Below are positions 5,226 to 62,926 of a stretch of 64,000 bases of DNA, one piece after another (the first letter of the stretch is position 1; the number at the start of each line of letters is the position of its first letter). Below the pieces are notes generated by a model, which was not told the DNA's origin, made no database searches, and was given only the letters and a program-made list of their open reading frames with translations. The DNA is from Asterias rubens (taxonomy: Eukaryota): positions 10,354,001 through 10,418,000 of the forward strand of contig NC_047081.1 in the NCBI RefSeq assembly GCF_902459465.1, written 5' to 3'. The translations under genes were made by a program, and so were the position numbers.

Positions 5226-5289
5226 ATGGCTGCTTCAGAGTATGACGAGATCAGGTCTCGTTACCACCTCAAAGAAACCGTTGGTTCAG
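5226..5289 (+). CDS. MELK: MELK coding exon 1 (MAASEYDEIRSRYHLKETVGSG); exon begins at acceptor 5183, so a non-coding exon lies upstream
   Basis: ATG in aacATGG context; G|gtaac donor; phase 1 joins exon 2. Confidence 0.93.
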
Positions 5290-5593
5290 GTAACAATATT
5301 TTAATTTTTTTTTACTTTGAAACTGCCTTTTAAGTTTTTGCGAAAAAGAAGAAGAGTTTCTCAGAGGTCAGTACCTCATGTGGGAAATATAAATTTTCAC
5401 TTGAACATAATTTTATGAGTTTCTCAGCGCTCAGATTAGGCATACATACCTTTCTGTGGGAAGAACAAATTTTCACTTGAACATTTTTAAGGACACAAAG
5501 GCAGGGGCATGGAGGCATCTGTCTTCATTGCCTTCCTTAAGTTTCATGTCTGTATCTTCATTCTTTGATCTTAATTTCCCTCTTCTCACTAAG

Positions 5594-5679
5594 GTGGTTT
5601 TGCCAAAGTGAAGTTAGCAACTCACATTGTTACTGGAGAGAAAGTAGCCGTGAAGATTATGGACAAGCGAGCATTAGGG
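5594..5679 (+). CDS. MELK: MELK exon 2 ([28 protein letters not shown])
   Basis: Gly-rich loop and VAVK lysine; taag| and |gtaagt sites; 86 nt. Confidence 0.97.
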
Positions 5680-6784
5680 GTAAGTTCACCAGGGCTCAAT
5701 TTTATAAAAGCACAAAAAGTAGCACAATACAATTTTGCTAACCAGAATAAGTTTACCAGCCAAACTACCATGTCACATGTTCAATTTGTGACTGGTATCC
5801 TGCTTATTTCTGCTTAGCAGAAAATTATTTAGCAATATTTGCTGCTTTAAATAGCTCTATGAAATTTGGCACAGGTAAACACATTTTGTTTGGCTTACTG
5901 AAGGAGAGGAATAAGAGCATTCTGCAGATTTTCGTACATTTAGTTTTTTGTGTATACTCCAGTGAGTATTGCAGACCAAACACTGTGACTTGGCTATAAT
6001 TTTGTGTTGTCGTCAGGGCTGGGTTTGTACAGTAACAATCTGAGAAAAGTAATTAAATGAAGACCTCGATACTCGCTACACATTCAGACAAAAAGAACTA
6101 GGTTTCGGCCACGCAACGCTTCGTTGAAAGCAATCTTCCCCACTGTGACCTAGAAAACGTTATCAAATTCCCATTTTGTCTTTATAAAGATTGGGTCCCA
6201 CATTAACCTATTTTCACATATATTGGAAAAAAAAAAAAAATAAATAAATCAACATAGAAGGCAAAAATACGCCGTACATTTGGACTGTAATGTAAGACGC
6301 AATGTGTGTATTTTCTTTAACAAAATGGATATTCTTGGAGCCTTCTCATAGATACTCGGGTTTCTTTATTCTTTTTGTAGGAGAACAGATGCGACTCTGT
6401 TGTGAGAGACTGATGTCGTGTAATGACTTGTACAATGATACTAATACCTGATCTAAAATTTCAAATTACTGTCTCGATCCTCTTTTTTTTCTTTTTTTCC
6501 TCTCCAACTCTTCGCCAACAAATAATACTGAATTAAAGTTTAATTGAACCTTAAAATTCTGTACACAGTGTACTTTTATTTGAACCACAACAGGAAAACA
6601 ATTGCGCAAACTAAAGAGTTGAAATAAATGTTTTAAAAAATCTTCTGAAAGCTGAATATGAGAATTGTCTCTGCATGTTCGGAAAAATCAAGGTGTTAAA
6701 AAAATAGTGAGCCCCTTTGTTTTTGACCCAACCAGAGTCTTTCTCAAAGGCTAATCAATGACACCAAAATTCCACAACACTCAC

Positions 6785-7140
6785 CTCATTATAAGTACAT
6801 TATACTTATATAGGATTTGAGGCATTGCATGGTGAGGTATCAATATATATTTGGTTTGCGGTAACACCATGTGTGTATCTACTTGCCAGGTAGAGTTGTT
6901 CTTAGGGAACTGTCTTGCTTTATTCTACTGCCGTGGAGTAGATAATCGGAGGGTCGGGAGACTTCTCAGTTCTGAAAAGAACTGTCCTGTTTATTAACTA
7001 TTACCAGGGCGGATGGTATAGAAATTAGACTGGACTACTACTTAAGCTTATAGGATCGTAATTAACTGTACTGCCGCGGAGTCAGTTCTGAAATTGGTCT
7101 CATTGTTTCGACTAGCTTGCTCTAGTCATCGTCAGGATGA
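6785..7140 (-). mobile_element. Non-autonomous Penelope-type fragment with a 5' hammerhead-like motif
   Basis: Body (ttcttttcagaac...catggtgttaccgcaaac...caccatgcaatgcctcaaatcc) recurs at 32420-32600 and, more diverged, at 9435-9610 and 39751-39906. The hammerhead-like head is at 7098-7139. Confidence 0.6.
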
Positions 7141-7420
7141 CTTGTGAAAAAAAAAACACACCTAAGACACTAGAAACAAATAAAATGAGAGAAGCAAAAA
7201 CCAGTCAGAATTTAAGCACGGTGTGAACAATCAGAGACTACATGAAGTTGCCCCTAGTCTTTGCCTTGGTGCCCATTCAAAAGTTTCCCATAGACCTTAA
7301 GATTTTCCAATAATAAAACTCCTCTAAGCAAAATGGCAATGGCCTTGCCCTCTCAAAGACAAGAGACAATGAGAAAGATGAAATCAAGTTAAGATATTCT
7401 CTTACCTTGGGTGTTTTCAG

Positions 7421-59512: not shown

Positions 59513-60246
59513 CTTCTTCTTTAACCTTAGGGTCATCTTCCGTCTCGTCTTGCGGGATGGCCGCAGCGGCAGCTGCAGTCGCAATCAAACTGTCGATGGA
59601 ATGCATGTTGGACGTGGGCTGCAGCAGGCCTTCTGTTGCGACGGTTACCACAGCATCATGGCCCTTTGTGCTCTGCATCGTCGTGGCAAGGGGAAGGATG
59701 TTGCCGACAGGGGGCACCCCCCGAAGGATTTGAGGGAGGGCAGGATGGGATGACTGTTGCACAATTGGTGTTTGAATGGAGGTGGGTGTGCTAGCCATGC
59801 TCATGCCGGTCACGGGGGTAGAAGTAGGGAGGCCTGCCAAATTAGCAGTCGACACAGGGTTGGTGCTGGACATGACAAACGGCCCCGTGAGCATGTTCAT
59901 GCCCTGCGGGGCAGGGCCGCCGGCTCCTGGGATGGTGTTCACCCCGCCGGGGAAGGAGAGAAAGTTACTCTGGACCTGAGAGGCAAGGGCCGACTGGGCA
60001 AGCTGGAGGAAGGCGGCGTACTGCTCCCTCTGGGCGTCGGTCATGCAGGCAATCTGCTGCTGGGTCAGGGTGGGCTGGCGGGCTATCATGTTGGGTCTGC
60101 AGTTTGGGGAGGCCATCGGGGAGGTCATGTTTGGTGAGGAGATTGGCGTCGACTCCAAGTCGCTGTGTCCGGAGTCCGCGTGATTCTTGGTGGTGAGTGA
60201 CAGGTCGTGTCGCACCTGTCCATTCACGATCTTGTTGCGCAGAATT
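59513..60246 (-). CDS. Pax exon C: paired end ILRNK, long S/T/P/Q-rich region, octapeptide-like HSIDSLIA (59580-59603), Ala run
   Basis: Within the 258-aa ORF 59490-60266; ttctgcag| acceptor; G|gtaaag donor in phase 1 matches exon D. Confidence 0.9.
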
Positions 60247-62253
60247 CTGCAGAAGAAAAACATCAATCAACCAATTCAATCGATCAGCATGGCTATTTGA
60301 TTATTTCAATTTGCTATTGCTGTATACATCAGTTTACCTGTTTTTAGGTTTTTAGCCTTCGAGAAAGACTCTGAAAGACTCTAGGGTCAAAACATAAGGC
60401 AATTAACTTGCGTCTTTTCCTTCTTCAAAACAAACAGAAAAACTATTTTTATACTGCCCACATCCAGGAATGAGTGGATTTTGTTATTCATAAAAGAAAT
60501 ATACTACTAGCACACTTGGCACTTTGCCAGCCAGCTTGAACTCCCATACAATGCATCAGCAATAGGCTTGTTTGTATACAATTAAAGGAACTGCCCAGGT
60601 ATAATTTATTTTTTAAATGATCACAAAGTATTAAAGTTTTCATGACTACATACATTGTACACATAAGTGACAGGATTTCACCTTAGCGATCAAGGTCATG
60701 TTTCTTATGTACATTTGCATTTAATCTATGTGATTCTCAAAACAACAAAGTGGAGCCAGACTATCTCATCACTTTAATTTGGTCATATTGATATTCCCAC
60801 ACCCGAGAAGTATGCCTGTACAGGCCTCCATTTAAACTGACGGCACCGACAGCCATGGTGCTCTGTGCTTTTGCTGTGGTGCCCTCAGCAAGGTTTTAAT
60901 AGTTTTCCGTGTACAAGTGCCCCTTATCAGAGACATTTTTGTGAACCCCTTCAAAAGAGAAGTTAAAGGCGTGACTGTGGATTTGTTCCTGGTAGGTCTC
61001 TGAAAAGCAATTAGTACAGCGCTTATCACACATCAGTGTACATGGTAAAATTAATTTTATATTGATTTGAACTTGGTAATACATTGTCTTCATCTTCTAA
61101 ATAAATACCGACTCGATTCCATGAGCAAAATCATCTGCAGCACAGTAACCATCCATTCTAAAATTTTGAGTGCAACAACAGAACTGTTCCTTTAATATTG
61201 TAATCATTTCAGTCCACAAATAGTTAACAATTGGTCAACCCAACCCCAACTACACCACAAAGTAACCCTTCTACACCACAAAGGGAACCCAGGTTTTCTT
61301 TACAGTCCTGCAGCAAGCACTTTTTGTATGTCCATTCTATGGTTTATTTTCAGGGGATGGTAGTACGCATGAATGCACAGACTCAACAAAGAGCTTCCTG
61401 GAGCAGTCCAGAGGTCCCTGGCACAACATTCAGGGGTCCACAACTACGATCCCCAGTGAACAATTTCTCACTGAAGCGTGGAAGGGACTGCAGTGGAACA
61501 TGAAAAGAGCTTCGCATGAATACACACTGTACAGTGCCTGATGAAAAATCATGCATGAGCGAACGGGCATAATGTACTTGTACTGTGGGTTTCGCTTTGA
61601 ATGAATGGAAACCATTTGGAAAATCCCAAACGGTGGCAAATACGTTCGTTCATTTTACACATCTGTCGCTCGCCCCATACAATCACTACATTATGCAATG
61701 ATGATGACAAATTCAGATTCTATCTTATGTTTAAATATTTGCCTTGTGAAAAAAATAGCTGTTCTTCAGATGTAAAGAAAATTTGCTCTTTGATGTAAAC
61801 CTCTTGCGCTGAGGATATGGTTCCAGGAAGCTTGTAGGAATCGTTTACTCCTGACCAGGGGTTACCAAACGATGGAAATGTCATCAATTCATAGTTGAAG
61901 ACCATTTGACAATGCCATTTCTTCTTTTGGGAGAGTAATAAAGTTTCTGATGTCTATTCTCACCCCCCGATTAAGTGGGGAGGTCTCCCAGCTGTATGTT
62001 TACCCTACATGTACGTTTAGTAAACCATCATGTTTTTCCCCGGCTACAAATGATTCAACAATCACTACACTATGCAATTTGGAAAGTTACATTTTTATCT
62101 CCTGTTTAGCACTACATCACATTTGTACACTTTTCAAACATTTATACTGTTTTGTTCATGAGGGTTTCTGTTTCTGACAGGAAAGTATTGAGCTAGTATT
62201 TATCAAGGCAAAGCTATAAAAAAACACCCCAATAAACAAACAAGGATTGTTAC

Positions 62254-62451
62254 CTGTTGATGGAGCTGACACTCGGTACCGTGTCCTTGGAGCACAACCC
62301 ATCCAATAGAAGTTTGTCCCGAATCTCCCAGGCGAAGATGGTGGGGCTGTCTCTCTTGTACTCAGCAATCTTATCAACGACATTGGACGTCGCTACCTTG
62401 GGCTTACTGCCACCGATCACTCCAGGGCGGATGGATCCCGTCTCTTGGTAT
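62254..62451 (-). CDS. Pax paired-domain exon B ([21 protein letters not shown]...[28 protein letters not shown])
   Basis: Linker and RED subdomain; 198 nt; phase 2 at both ends. Confidence 0.98.
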
Positions 62452-62760
62452 CTGAAGATGATCAAACAAAACTCAATTTAGATGTATGCAGGCATGATAT
62501 TTGGTCCTTGGGAAAAGTAGAAACAGTTCATAGTCTGTAGGCATTATAATTCAAAGAGGAATTTCCAAGTTCCTCATACCAAGGAAAAAACGCCTTGATG
62601 CCCTTGCCATATCAAAAACGTAGCATCAGGCCCAGTACTACTGTAGTATAACTTTGAGTAACAGTGGGGTTGCCCTTGATAAGTGTCGGACAAGACTTCA
62701 GAACTTGTGTACAATATCTTGGAAGATTTACATATAAATATCTGAGATGTTTCAACTTAC

Positions 62761-62926
62761 CTTACAAGGATCTTGCTGACGCAGCCATGAGAGACCTTGA
62801 GCTGCCGTGAGATGTCGCAGGAACGCACACCCTTCTTAGACAACTCTACGATAAGCTGGCGTATATGAACAGGTAAGGGACGGCCGTTAGCAAAGTTCCC
62901 TCCGAGTTGATTGATGCCTTCACATT
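62761..62926 (-). CDS. Pax paired-domain exon A ([56 protein letters not shown])
   Basis: PAI subdomain; 166 nt; tcctcag| and AG|gtaagt; needs an upstream phase-1 exon. Confidence 0.97.

What the first reader, a model, noticed from the sequence alone, without database searches (positions are those of the whole stretch)
5226..62926. MELK (+) and a Pax2/5/8-related gene (-) lie tail-to-tail, as MELK-PAX5 do in vertebrates
Seen: the MELK stop at 37359 and the Pax stop at 49296 are about 12 kb apart, convergent, with no recognisable protein-coding gene between them. Known: human MELK and PAX5 are neighbouring, convergently transcribed genes on 9p13. Inference: in an apparent invertebrate deuterostome this would be a microsynteny older than the echinoderm-chordate split. 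It fits a genomic regulatory block in which a cell-cycle bystander gene carries enhancers for the developmental TF in its large introns (MELK here spans 32 kb for a 2 kb CDS). I do not know whether this pair has been reported.
Basis: partly seen in the sequence, partly recalled or inferred. Interest (0 to 1): 0.78.

Follow-up and report, generated by a model that had tools for sequence, protein, structure and literature searches.

The report
Starfish MELK beside paxB, Pax2/5/8 nearby
In the starfish Asterias rubens the kinase gene MELK ends tail-to-tail with paxB, an echinoderm-only offshoot of Pax2/5/8, while the true Pax2/5/8 gene lies 65 kb further on; this resembles the vertebrate MELK-PAX5 pair, but I could show the arrangement only in starfish.

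Summary
MELK (+, ATG 5226, stop 37357-37359) and a paired-box gene (-, stop 49296-49298) converge 11.9 kb apart. Nothing recognisably coding lies between them.

The interpretation needs correcting. The genome is Asterias rubens. The Pax gene is LOC117303661, the orthologue of sea-urchin paxB (Czerny et al. 1997). paxB is a divergent, echinoderm-wide relative of Pax2/5/8 with no homeodomain or Pax2_C match. The canonical Pax2/5/8 orthologue lies 65 kb beyond paxB's 5' end, head-to-head with it. The two genes share three intron positions and phases in the paired box, and in a sea cucumber they are tandem neighbours. paxB is therefore most likely a local duplicate.

MELK converging on paxB is conserved in two other starfish orders' representatives: Acanthaster (9.0 kb gap) and Patiria (7.0 kb). 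No MELK lies within 10 kb of paxB or Pax2/5/8 in sea urchin, sea cucumber, crinoid, acorn worm or amphioxus. That was the tool's reach, so it does not exclude linkage further out.

An ancestral MELK-Pax2/5/8 linkage is plausible but not shown. The regulatory-block idea has no support: only exons, repeats and one ~35-bp core are conserved where I could test. This scan had only noted the odd paired domain on this same window.

The parts
5226..37359 (+). MELK coding region (ATG to stop). Heuristic 14-exon model: 5226-5289, 5594-5679, 7421-7537, 11277-11420, 18319-18387, 23912-24004, 25710-25877, 26252-26350, 27800-27886, 31230-31334, 31987-32408, 33917-34109, 36444-36550, 37182-37359.
   Evidence: Pfam Pkinase and KA1 on exons. 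Best PDB matches are MELK. KA1 exon matches MARK KA1 structures. Splice model is; the 31334/31987 junction is weak and an exon may be missing. The last three exons are 78-81% identical in DNA to Acanthaster and Patiria MELK. Those genes carry Pkinase + UBA_MELK + KA1.
37360..49295 (.). Spacer between the two stop codons (11,936 bp): 3' UTRs, high-copy repeats, no recognisable gene.
   Evidence: No protein-level conservation of any ORF of 50 aa or more against the Acanthaster and Patiria spacers. No Pfam family above cut-off in the longest ORFs. Very deep repeat blocks lie at about 45200-45593, 45988-46578 and 47761-48351. RNA-run contigs cover 45453-47933, so the paxB 3' UTR may be long.
43600..43640 (-). 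Only candidate conserved non-coding core in the spacer (TGTGCTGGTTT ... TTATTGCACAAC).
   Evidence: Weak collinear blastn hits in both Acanthaster and Patiria spacers, E 0.003-0.007. Three-way alignment shows a 12-bp invariant run. Could be chance.
48233..49295 (-). paxB 3' UTR, minimum extent.
   Evidence: Spliced contigs of runs X1 and X2 run from the last exon down to 48233/48234, where a repeat breaks them.
49296..49399 (-). paxB last coding exon, with stop at 49298-49296.
   Evidence: Exact match to the end of P0153. Joined to the previous exon in an X2 contig, while the intron is retained in an X1 contig.
49812..51029 (-). paxB exons 49976-49812, 50350-50218 and 51029-50761. They carry the C-terminal motifs shared by starfish, sea-urchin and sea-cucumber paxB (ELKPASVLG).
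   Evidence: exact exons; joints in contigs of four runs; motif conserved across classes.
59513..60246 (-). paxB large exon (end of paired domain ILRNKIVNG, then a low-complexity region).
   Evidence: 65-69% DNA identity to Acanthaster and Patiria.
62254..62451 (-). paxB paired-box exon B (RED half).
   Evidence: Pfam PAX E 2.3e-34. Best PDB matches are Pax8, then Pax5, Pax6 and Prd. Splice sites read; exact exon.
62761..62926 (-). paxB paired-box exon A (PAI half, divergent: [34 protein letters not shown]).
   Evidence: Pfam PAX E 1.4e-23. Intron positions and phases are the same as in the neighbouring Pax2/5/8 gene.

Best explanation
The window holds Asterias rubens MELK and the 3' two-thirds of paxB (LOC117303661, 927 aa).

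What paxB is. It is a paired-domain-only transcription factor found in every echinoderm class for which I obtained a sequence. It most likely arose in the echinoderm stem by local duplication of Pax2/5/8 and then diverged quickly. It kept the paired box and its three intron positions but has no match to the other Pax2/5/8 modules. The true Pax2/5/8 orthologue lies 65 kb upstream of paxB, head-to-head.

The gene order. In starfish it is MELK> <paxB Pax2/5/8>. The MELK> <paxB convergent pair has been kept since the starfish orders split.

The likely history (inferred, not shown). The deuterostome ancestor had MELK> <Pax2/5/8, which vertebrates still show as MELK> <PAX5. The duplicate that stayed next to MELK became paxB.

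I see no evidence that the pair is held together by shared enhancers. It may simply not yet have been broken in starfish and vertebrates, while it was rearranged in sea urchins and sea cucumbers.
For: Identity:
- P0153, 'LOC117303661 [Asterias rubens]', sits on a contig of 12,664,855 bp, the same length as the window's contig C21. It maps at 100%.
- It forms a 99/99 clade with Paracentrotus O16801 (accession order O16800/O16801 against AF016884 pax2/5/8 and AF016885 paxB suggests this is paxB; PMC9231221), with S. purpuratus, Lytechinus and Diadema proteins, and with the Apostichopus and Anneissia proteins.
- These share signature residues ([23 protein letters not shown]); all but the crinoid also share a C-terminal ELKPASVLG motif.

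Relation to Pax2/5/8:
- The best PDB matches are Pax8 and Pax5.
- The nearest of 1.8 billion representatives that I identified are Pax2/5/8 proteins.
- The paired domain is 75.6% identical to the A. rubens Pax2/5/8 and at most 71.8% to its five other Pax genes.
- Three introns share position and phase with the neighbouring Pax2/5/8.
- A clade of paxB plus echinoderm Pax2/5/8 is not rejected (AU p = 0.185).
- In Apostichopus, Pax2/5/8 and paxB are tandem, 8 kb apart.

Canonical Pax2/5/8: its exons lie at window coordinates 133,686-160,846 on the + strand.

Synteny:
- Acanthaster and Patiria have MELK (Pkinase + UBA_MELK + KA1) convergent, 9.0 and 7.0 kb past paxB.
- Mouse and human Pax5 is flanked by Melk and Zcchc7 and runs opposite to both (PMC6132355).
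- A TRM10-type gene lies about 190 kb past the MELK stop on the same contig. From my own knowledge, human TRMT10B is at 9p13.2 near PAX5.
Against: - In the paired-domain tree, paxB falls outside a 94/85 clade that holds bilaterian Pax2/5/8 and cnidarian PaxB. An older origin, or long-branch attraction, cannot be told apart.
- The split joining paxB and Pax2/5/8 against the other Pax genes has only 83/65 support, and the other subfamilies were thinly sampled.
- No similarity to Pax2/5/8 is detectable outside the paired domain.
- No MELK exon lies within 10 kb of paxB or Pax2/5/8 in S. purpuratus, paxB in Apostichopus, the paxB-like gene of Antedon, Pax2/5/8 of Glandiceps, or Pax2/5/8 of Branchiostoma belcheri.
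- In Apostichopus the 3' neighbour of paxB is a zf-CCHC gene, not MELK.
- In S. purpuratus, paxB and Pax2/5/8 are 13 Mb apart.
- So the link between starfish and vertebrates rests on two end points.
Confidence: 0.6

Rival explanations
1. Coincidence. MELK landed next to a Pax2/5/8-family gene independently in the starfish lineage and in vertebrates, so the resemblance to MELK-PAX5 has no common origin.
For: The adjacent gene is paxB, not the orthologue of PAX5. The pair is absent within 10 kb in every non-starfish species I could look at. Echinoderm gene order here is clearly fluid: Pax2/5/8 and paxB are head-to-head in Asterias, tandem in Apostichopus and 13 Mb apart in S. purpuratus.
Against: Immediate neighbours in the same convergent orientation in two phyla is unlikely by chance. 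My rough estimate is a few per thousand, even for genes confined to one ancestral linkage group. Conserved pairs between echinoderms and vertebrates number in the hundreds (Irimia et al. 2012, PMC3514665). Other genes of the neighbourhood also have human relatives near PAX5 or on its paralogous regions: TRM10-type and the zf-CCHC gene beside paxB in sea cucumber. The 10-kb reach of the look-ups cannot show absence; the human gap is over 100 kb.
Confidence: 0.22
2. Genomic regulatory block. MELK is a bystander whose large introns carry long-range enhancers of paxB and/or Pax2/5/8, and selection against breaking these contacts has kept the genes together.
For: MELK spans 32 kb for about 2 kb of CDS. 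The pair has survived since the starfish orders diverged. Developmental transcription factors are the usual targets of such blocks (PMC3514665).
Against: - In everything I could compare across starfish (the spacer, all of paxB, 10 kb upstream of it, and the last 3.4 kb of MELK), only exons, repeats, one ~35-bp core and one 120-bp upstream element are conserved.
- MELK introns hold SINE-like repeats.
- The arrangement is broken or different in sea urchin and sea cucumber, which a strong constraint should prevent.
- In mouse B cells, Pax5 expression is reported as independent of Melk and Zcchc7 (PMC6132355).
- Most of the MELK introns could not be compared, so this is absence of evidence.
Confidence: 0.12
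3. paxB is an ancient, separate Pax subfamily, older than the bilaterian Pax2/5/8 crown and lost everywhere but echinoderms. Its position next to Pax2/5/8 would then be a remnant of a much older tandem pair.
For: The paired-domain tree places paxB outside the clade of bilaterian Pax2/5/8 plus cnidarian PaxB (94/85). There is no similarity outside the paired domain.
Against: The paxB stem branch is long (0.36 changes per column), which invites misplacement. The AU test does not reject paxB plus echinoderm Pax2/5/8 (p = 0.185). No non-echinoderm sequence joined the paxB clade among the best 150 of 1.8 billion representatives or among 841 long Pax proteins. This reading requires many independent losses.
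Confidence: 0.1

Closest known systems
Vertebrate Melk - Pax5 - Zcchc7 locus (mouse chr 4, human 9p13; PMC6132355)
   Same: MELK and a Pax2/5/8-family gene are immediate neighbours and converge, with no gene between.
   Different: The starfish neighbour is paxB, not the Pax2/5/8 orthologue. The gap is 12 kb, whereas the Melk-to-Zcchc7 interval that holds Pax5 is 392-444 kb. No ZCCHC7-like gene lies within 224 kb in Asterias. A zf-CCHC gene does sit next to paxB in a sea cucumber, but its identity was not checked.
Sea-urchin paxB (suPaxB of Czerny, Bouchard, Kozmik and Busslinger 1997; P. lividus AF016885, probably UniProt O16801; Sp-PaxB)
   Same: Orthologue: 99/99 clade, shared signature residues in the paired domain, shared C-terminal motif.
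   Different: The starfish protein is about 300 aa longer, through three extra 5' coding exons. I found no open paper describing its linkage to Pax2/5/8 and MELK.
Canonical Pax2/5/8 (vertebrate PAX2/5/8, Drosophila shaven, amphioxus Pax2/5/8)
   Same: Most similar paired domain. Identical three intron positions and phases in the paired box. Physical neighbour of the A. rubens orthologue.
   Different: No Pfam homeodomain or Pax2_C match and no canonical octapeptide (only a weak HSIDSLIA look-alike). Divergent PAI half. Falls outside the crown clade in the tree.
Ancient microsyntenic pairs and genomic regulatory blocks (e.g. Pax6-Elp4; the Pax1/9-Slc25a21-Mipol1-FoxA cluster; Irimia et al. 2012, PMC3514665)
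   Same: A developmental transcription factor lies next to an unrelated housekeeping or cell-cycle gene, shared by distant animals.
   Different: Conservation is shown here only within starfish plus vertebrates. No conserved non-coding elements or contacts were demonstrated.

Membership tests
MELK (maternal embryonic leucine zipper kinase) | AMPK-related Ser/Thr kinase domain closest to MELK | tested here: met
   Pfam Pkinase on exons. The top 14 PDB sequences are MELK, E 8e-24, ahead of AMPK at 5e-20.
MELK (maternal embryonic leucine zipper kinase) | UBA domain after the kinase and a C-terminal KA1 domain | tested here: met
   KA1 Pfam E 2.5e-14 on the last exon, and it matches MARK KA1 structures. 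The UBA is split by an intron, so the Pfam search of the raw genome found nothing. The Acanthaster and Patiria orthologues, whose last exons match at 83-88% aa identity, carry PF21594 UBA_MELK.
Pax2/5/8 subfamily | Paired domain that groups inside the Pax2/5/8 clade | tested here: inconclusive
   Nearest by identity (75.6% against at most 71.8%) and by PDB ranking. The tree puts it outside the 94/85 clade of all other Pax2/5/8, and the joint split has only 83/65 support. The AU test does not reject a clade with echinoderm Pax2/5/8.
Pax2/5/8 subfamily | Octapeptide (YSINGLLG-type) shortly after the paired domain | tested here: not met
   Not present in P0153 at the expected place. Only a distant look-alike, HSIDSLIA, about 210 aa downstream, conserved in starfish only. 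The neighbouring gene's Acanthaster orthologue has YSINGILG.
Pax2/5/8 subfamily | Partial homeodomain and Pax2_C C-terminal region | tested here: not met
   Pfam finds only PAX in the Acanthaster orthologue P0006, and PAX is the only precomputed family listed for P0153. BLASTP of the post-paired region against Acanthaster Pax2/5/8 finds nothing beyond the paired-domain end.
Pax2/5/8 subfamily | Characteristic intron positions in the paired box | tested here: met
   Introns before G-x-G-G-V/I-NQLGG (phase 1), inside the Arg codon of ILGR/ILVR | Y (phase 2), and inside the Arg codon after SSIN (phase 2) are identical in paxB and the A. rubens Pax2/5/8.
Echinoderm paxB | Orthology to P. lividus / S. 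purpuratus paxB | tested here: met
   99/99 clade with O16801 and the S. purpuratus 'paired box protein'. Shared [23 protein letters not shown] and [11 protein letters not shown] across all nine sequences; ILRNKIVNG and ELKPASVLG in all but the crinoid. The paxB accession is named in PMC9231221.
Ancient microsynteny / genomic regulatory block | Same gene pair adjacent in several distant phyla | tested here: inconclusive
   Present in three starfish (window) and in mouse and human. Not within 10 kb in sea urchin, sea cucumber, crinoid, hemichordate or amphioxus. Larger distances could not be examined.
Ancient microsynteny / genomic regulatory block | Conserved non-coding elements or enhancers of the target gene inside or beyond the bystander | tested here: inconclusive
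   None found in the spacer, paxB introns or the last 3.4 kb of MELK, apart from one ~35-bp core. The bulk of the MELK introns had no sequence to compare with.
Ancient microsynteny / genomic regulatory block | Physical promoter-enhancer contacts spanning the bystander | not testable with these tools
   Needs Hi-C, 4C or ATAC data.

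The most novel reading that the evidence does not exclude
A three-gene block MELK> <Pax2/5/8 ZCCHC7> was already present in the deuterostome ancestor and survives in vertebrates around PAX5. In stem echinoderms, Pax2/5/8 duplicated in place, and the copy next to MELK became paxB. Starfish then inverted Pax2/5/8. Sea cucumbers inverted the paxB-Pax2/5/8 pair as a unit, which would explain why paxB there abuts a zf-CCHC gene. 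This predicts MELK just upstream of Pax2/5/8 in Apostichopus. The block would be held together, at least in some lineages, by regulatory elements shared across it.
Probability: 0.2. Interest if true: 0.6.

Novelty: new member of a known kind. Interest (0 to 1): 0.4.

Why it matters
If MELK-Pax2/5/8 linkage does date to the deuterostome ancestor, it adds one more deeply conserved neighbourhood around a key developmental regulator. It would also give a genomic anchor for how the echinoderm-only gene paxB was born: a duplicate that stayed in the ancestral slot while the conserved copy moved. That makes paxB a tidy case for studying what happens to a duplicated transcription factor and its regulatory landscape. 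On its own it is a modest result. Conserved gene pairs of this kind are common, paxB has been known since 1997, and nothing here shows a regulatory reason for the linkage.

Tried and rejected
- Homologue search with the large paxB exon alone found only one 207-aa fragment. The full proteins were outside the length window.
- Contig look-ups failed for non-longest isoforms. Cluster listing supplied the longest ones.
- MELK could not be used as the anchor in other species. No stop-free stretch of the window is long enough to reach full-length MELK in the protein search, and I did not type a spliced sequence. That step was left out. All 12 contig look-ups went on Pax anchors, with 10-kb flanks.
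- Searches of the raw genome with PF21594 (UBA_MELK) and PF05587 (Anth_Ig) found nothing, presumably because introns split these short domains.
- The search for a ZCCHC7-like gene near the locus found no CCHC knuckle from -40 to +184 kb and no PF00098 hit on C21 near 10.3-10.6 Mb.
- The identity of the sea-cucumber zf-CCHC gene could not be checked. The held DNA covers only its 5' end, with no informative ORF.
- Literature: no relevant open paper combines MELK, PAX5 or Pax2/5/8 with synteny. The supplementary tables of Irimia 2012 and of the 2020 MBE paper on regulatory blocks are not held, and their main texts do not mention the pair. I therefore cannot say whether the pair is already in a published list.
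- The spacer ORF 43590-44036 (149 aa) overlapping the weak DNA hits has no protein conservation and no Pfam hit, so I rejected it as a gene.
- The Rfam histone stem-loop hit at 39796-39840 is at the cut-off, with no histone ORF upstream. I treat it as chance or a repeat.

Full report
**What is in the window**

The window is G000:C21:10354001-10418000 of a 417.6-Mb, 150-contig assembly. The protein P0153, named by NCBI 'uncharacterized protein LOC117303661 isoform X1 [Asterias rubens]', sits on a contig of 12,664,855 bp. That is the length of C21, and the protein maps to the window and its right flank at 100%. The genome is therefore the common starfish, Asterias rubens.

**MELK**

On the + strand a chain of short exons runs from an ATG at 5226 to a stop at 37357-37359.
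- The exons hit Pfam Pkinase, and the last one hits KA1.
- One kinase exon matches human and mouse MELK structures best (E 8e-24), ahead of AMPK.
- The KA1 exon matches MARK KA1 structures.
- A splice-site model of my own gives 14 exons, 1,932 nt and 643 aa over 32,134 bp.
- The model is approximate. The orthologues in Acanthaster and Patiria are 719 and 705 aa and carry Pkinase + UBA_MELK + KA1.

**The Pax gene**

On the - strand the paired box lies in two exons, 62926-62761 and 62451-62254. Further exons follow at 60246-59513, 51029-50761, 50350-50218, 49976-49812 and 49399-49296, with the stop at 49298-49296. Joined, these give residues 340-927 of P0153 exactly.

Contigs from four public runs show the joints 51031|50761...50350|50218...49976. 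In one run the last intron is spliced out; in another it is retained. The contigs run at least 1 kb into the 3' UTR.

The gene does not begin at 62926. Three more coding exons, at window coordinates 65317-65415, 66584-67234 and 68514-68777 (ATG), lie past the window's end.

**The spacer**

The two stops are 11,936 bp apart and the genes converge.
- No ORF of 50 aa or more in the spacer is conserved at protein level in the corresponding spacers of two other starfish.
- The longest ORFs have no Pfam family above cut-off.
- The spacer is largely UTR and high-copy repeats.

**Which Pax gene it is**

A search of the whole genome with the PAX model finds seven Pax loci. By their paired-domain sequences, my reading from known signatures is:
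- a Pax1/9 on C1;
- a Pax6 on C23;
- a Poxn-like gene on C2;
- two others, on C4 and C18;
- the window's gene;
- a seventh only about 70 kb away on the same contig and the opposite strand.

That seventh gene has a textbook Pax2/5/8 paired domain ([37 protein letters not shown]...). Its exons match the Acanthaster 'Pax-5-like' protein, which has the octapeptide YSINGILG, from window coordinates 133,686 to 160,846. The orthologue of vertebrate PAX2/5/8 is this neighbour, not the gene beside MELK.

The window's gene has full-length orthologues in many echinoderms:
- the starfish Acanthaster and Patiria (930-951 aa);
- the sea urchins S. purpuratus, Lytechinus, Diadema and Paracentrotus (about 600-636 aa);
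- the sea cucumber Apostichopus (633 aa);
- the feather stars Anneissia and Antedon.

In a paired-domain tree these form a 99/99 clade. They share signature residues; all but the crinoid also share a C-terminal ELKPASVLG motif. The Paracentrotus member is UniProt O16801. Its companion O16800 is the Pax2/5/8 of the same species. PMC9231221 lists the two GenBank entries as paxB (AF016885) and pax2/5/8 (AF016884), both from Czerny et al. 1997; the matching accession order suggests that O16801 is paxB. The gene is echinoderm paxB, known since 1997.

**How paxB relates to Pax2/5/8**

For a close relation:
- The best solved structures are Pax8 and Pax5.
- The nearest of 1.8 billion representatives that I identified are Pax2/5/8 proteins.
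- Paired-domain identity is 75.6% to the A. rubens Pax2/5/8 and at most 71.8% to its other five Pax genes.
- All three introns in and around the paired box share position and phase with the neighbouring Pax2/5/8.
- In Apostichopus the two genes are tandem neighbours 8 kb apart.

Against simple membership:
- The tree puts paxB on a long branch outside a 94/85 clade that holds bilaterian Pax2/5/8 and cnidarian PaxB.
- The split uniting paxB and Pax2/5/8 against the other families has only 83/65 support.
- Pfam finds neither a homeodomain nor Pax2_C, and no canonical octapeptide stands out in the alignment.
- BLASTP finds nothing in common after the paired domain.

An AU test does not reject paxB plus echinoderm Pax2/5/8 as one clade (p = 0.185). 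No non-echinoderm sequence joined the paxB clade.

My reading is a local duplication of Pax2/5/8 in the echinoderm stem, followed by fast divergence. An older origin remains possible. 'Pax2/5/8-related' is fair; 'the Pax2/5/8 gene' is not.

**Is the MELK-Pax pair conserved?**

Contig look-ups reach only 10 kb either side of a gene.

| Species (group) | Anchor gene | What lies within 10 kb |
|---|---|---|
| Acanthaster (starfish) | paxB | convergent MELK 9.0 kb past the 3' end |
| Patiria (starfish) | paxB | convergent MELK 7.0 kb past the 3' end |
| S. purpuratus (sea urchin) | paxB and Pax2/5/8 | no gene beside either; the two Pax genes are 13 Mb apart on one chromosome |
| Apostichopus (sea cucumber) | paxB | order is Pax2/5/8> paxB> zf-CCHC gene>; no MELK |
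| Antedon (crinoid) | paxB-like gene | other neighbours |
| Glandiceps (acorn worm) | Pax2/5/8 | no neighbour |
| Branchiostoma belcheri (amphioxus) | Pax2/5/8 | no neighbour |

tblastn with the Asterias MELK exons finds nothing in any of the non-starfish loci. These negatives are weak. In mouse and human the Melk-to-Zcchc7 interval that holds Pax5 is 392-444 kb (PMC6132355).

**Weighing common descent against chance**

Being immediate neighbours in the same convergent orientation in starfish and vertebrates is improbable by chance. My rough estimate is a few per thousand, even within one ancestral linkage group. Truly conserved pairs between such animals number in the hundreds (PMC3514665).

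The wider neighbourhood also points the same way.
- A TRM10-type methyltransferase exon lies at C21:10,580,729. From my own knowledge, human TRMT10B is at 9p13.2 near PAX5 and MELK.
I confirmed only the TRM10 hit.
- The zf-CCHC gene beside sea-cucumber paxB recalls ZCCHC7, the other neighbour of PAX5. I could not verify its identity.

I therefore put common descent of the linkage at roughly 0.6-0.7 and independent origin at about 0.2.

**The regulatory-block idea**

I compared the Asterias sequence with the Acanthaster and Patiria loci. These cover the spacer, all of paxB, 10 kb upstream of it, and the last 1-3 kb of MELK.
- Only exons and repeats align at E 1e-5 or better.
- A more sensitive search of the spacer gives one weak collinear hit in both species, with a ~35-bp core (TGTGCTGGTTT..TTATTGCACAAC) at about 43600-43640.
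- One 120-bp element about 7 kb upstream of the paxB ATG is shared with Acanthaster.
- The MELK introns contain SINE-like tRNA-Ser copies.
- Most of the MELK introns could not be compared.
- The arrangement is rearranged in sea urchin and sea cucumber.
- In mouse B cells, Pax5 expression was reported as independent of Melk and Zcchc7.

Nothing here supports a regulatory block. It is not excluded.

**Novelty and score**

paxB and MELK are known genes, and conserved gene pairs are a known kind of thing. I found no open text reporting MELK-Pax2/5/8 synteny outside vertebrates, nor the physical linkage of paxB with Pax2/5/8. The relevant supplementary tables were not available, so prior listing cannot be ruled out.

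I rate it a new member of a known kind, of moderate interest. The useful outcomes are:
- the corrected gene identity;
- the evidence that paxB is a local duplicate of Pax2/5/8;
- a concrete, testable model of the ancestral MELK-Pax2/5/8(-ZCCHC7) block.

Noticed in passing
L034 (Apostichopus japonicus CM075703.1:1452565-1491495), 1-1871, 10001-28931, 35484-38931: In the sea cucumber, Pax2/5/8 (413 aa), paxB (633 aa) and a 736-aa zf-CCHC gene lie in a row on one strand, 8 kb and 6.5 kb apart. Vertebrate PAX5 is flanked by MELK and ZCCHC7. One inversion of the paxB-Pax2/5/8 pair from an ancestral MELK> <paxB <Pax2/5/8 ZCCHC7> order would give this layout.
   Followed up: partly
beyond the window: G000:C21:10487686-10514846 (window coordinates 133686-160846, + strand): The canonical Pax2/5/8 gene of Asterias rubens, head-to-head with paxB about 65 kb away. 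No Pfam-recognisable ORF was found among the longest ORFs in between.
   Followed up: yes
beyond the window: window coordinates 65317-68777 (- strand; loci L012, L006/L009): Starfish paxB has three extra 5' coding exons giving an N-terminal extension of about 330 aa. It contains a Cys-rich CCxCxxCxCxCH stretch and conserved motifs (LGLVAPFNRNNLHAKRR, CQLPIDLSIK). Sea-urchin, sea-cucumber and crinoid paxB lack it. Function unknown.
   Followed up: partly
window 12469-12542 and 20000-20073 (- strand): Two tRNA-Ser(AGA)-like elements in MELK introns (Rfam 43 and 54 bits; ARAGORN). The same flanking ORF text occurs at both sites, so they look like copies of a tRNA-derived SINE rather than working tRNA genes.
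   Followed up: partly
window 39796-39840 (+ strand): Rfam histone 3' stem-loop match just at the gathering score (34.4 against 34), 2.4 kb past the MELK stop: GGTTCTTTTCAGAACC. There is no histone ORF upstream. Possibly part of a repeat or of the MELK 3' UTR.
   Followed up: partly
window 48233-49976 (- strand): One run's contig retains the last paxB intron while another splices it (49812|49399). This implies two C-terminal isoforms; the read-through form would end ...TYTQGTTHKTLSRTENQTILGGQ.
   Followed up: no
beyond the window: G000:C21:10580729-10580860 (+) and about 35.5 kb left of the window start (- strand, L027:4303-4581): A TRM10-type tRNA methyltransferase exon lies right of Pax2/5/8, and an inorganic pyrophosphatase exon lies left of MELK. 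From my own knowledge, their human relatives (TRMT10A/B, PPA1/2) sit on 4q, 9p13 and 10q, the regions that hold or are paralogous to PAX5 and PAX2. This suggests block-level synteny.
   Followed up: partly
window 63096-63345 and 28094-28346: Short repeats shared with unrelated positions in the Patiria and Acanthaster paxB introns. The first matches Patiria in both orientations (palindromic, MITE-like).
   Followed up: no
L028 and L032 (S. purpuratus AAGJ06000010.1): In the purple sea urchin, paxB (5.18-5.23 Mb) and Pax2/5/8 (18.55-18.61 Mb) are on the same chromosome-scale contig but 13 Mb apart. The tandem pair has been pulled apart in that lineage.
   Followed up: yes
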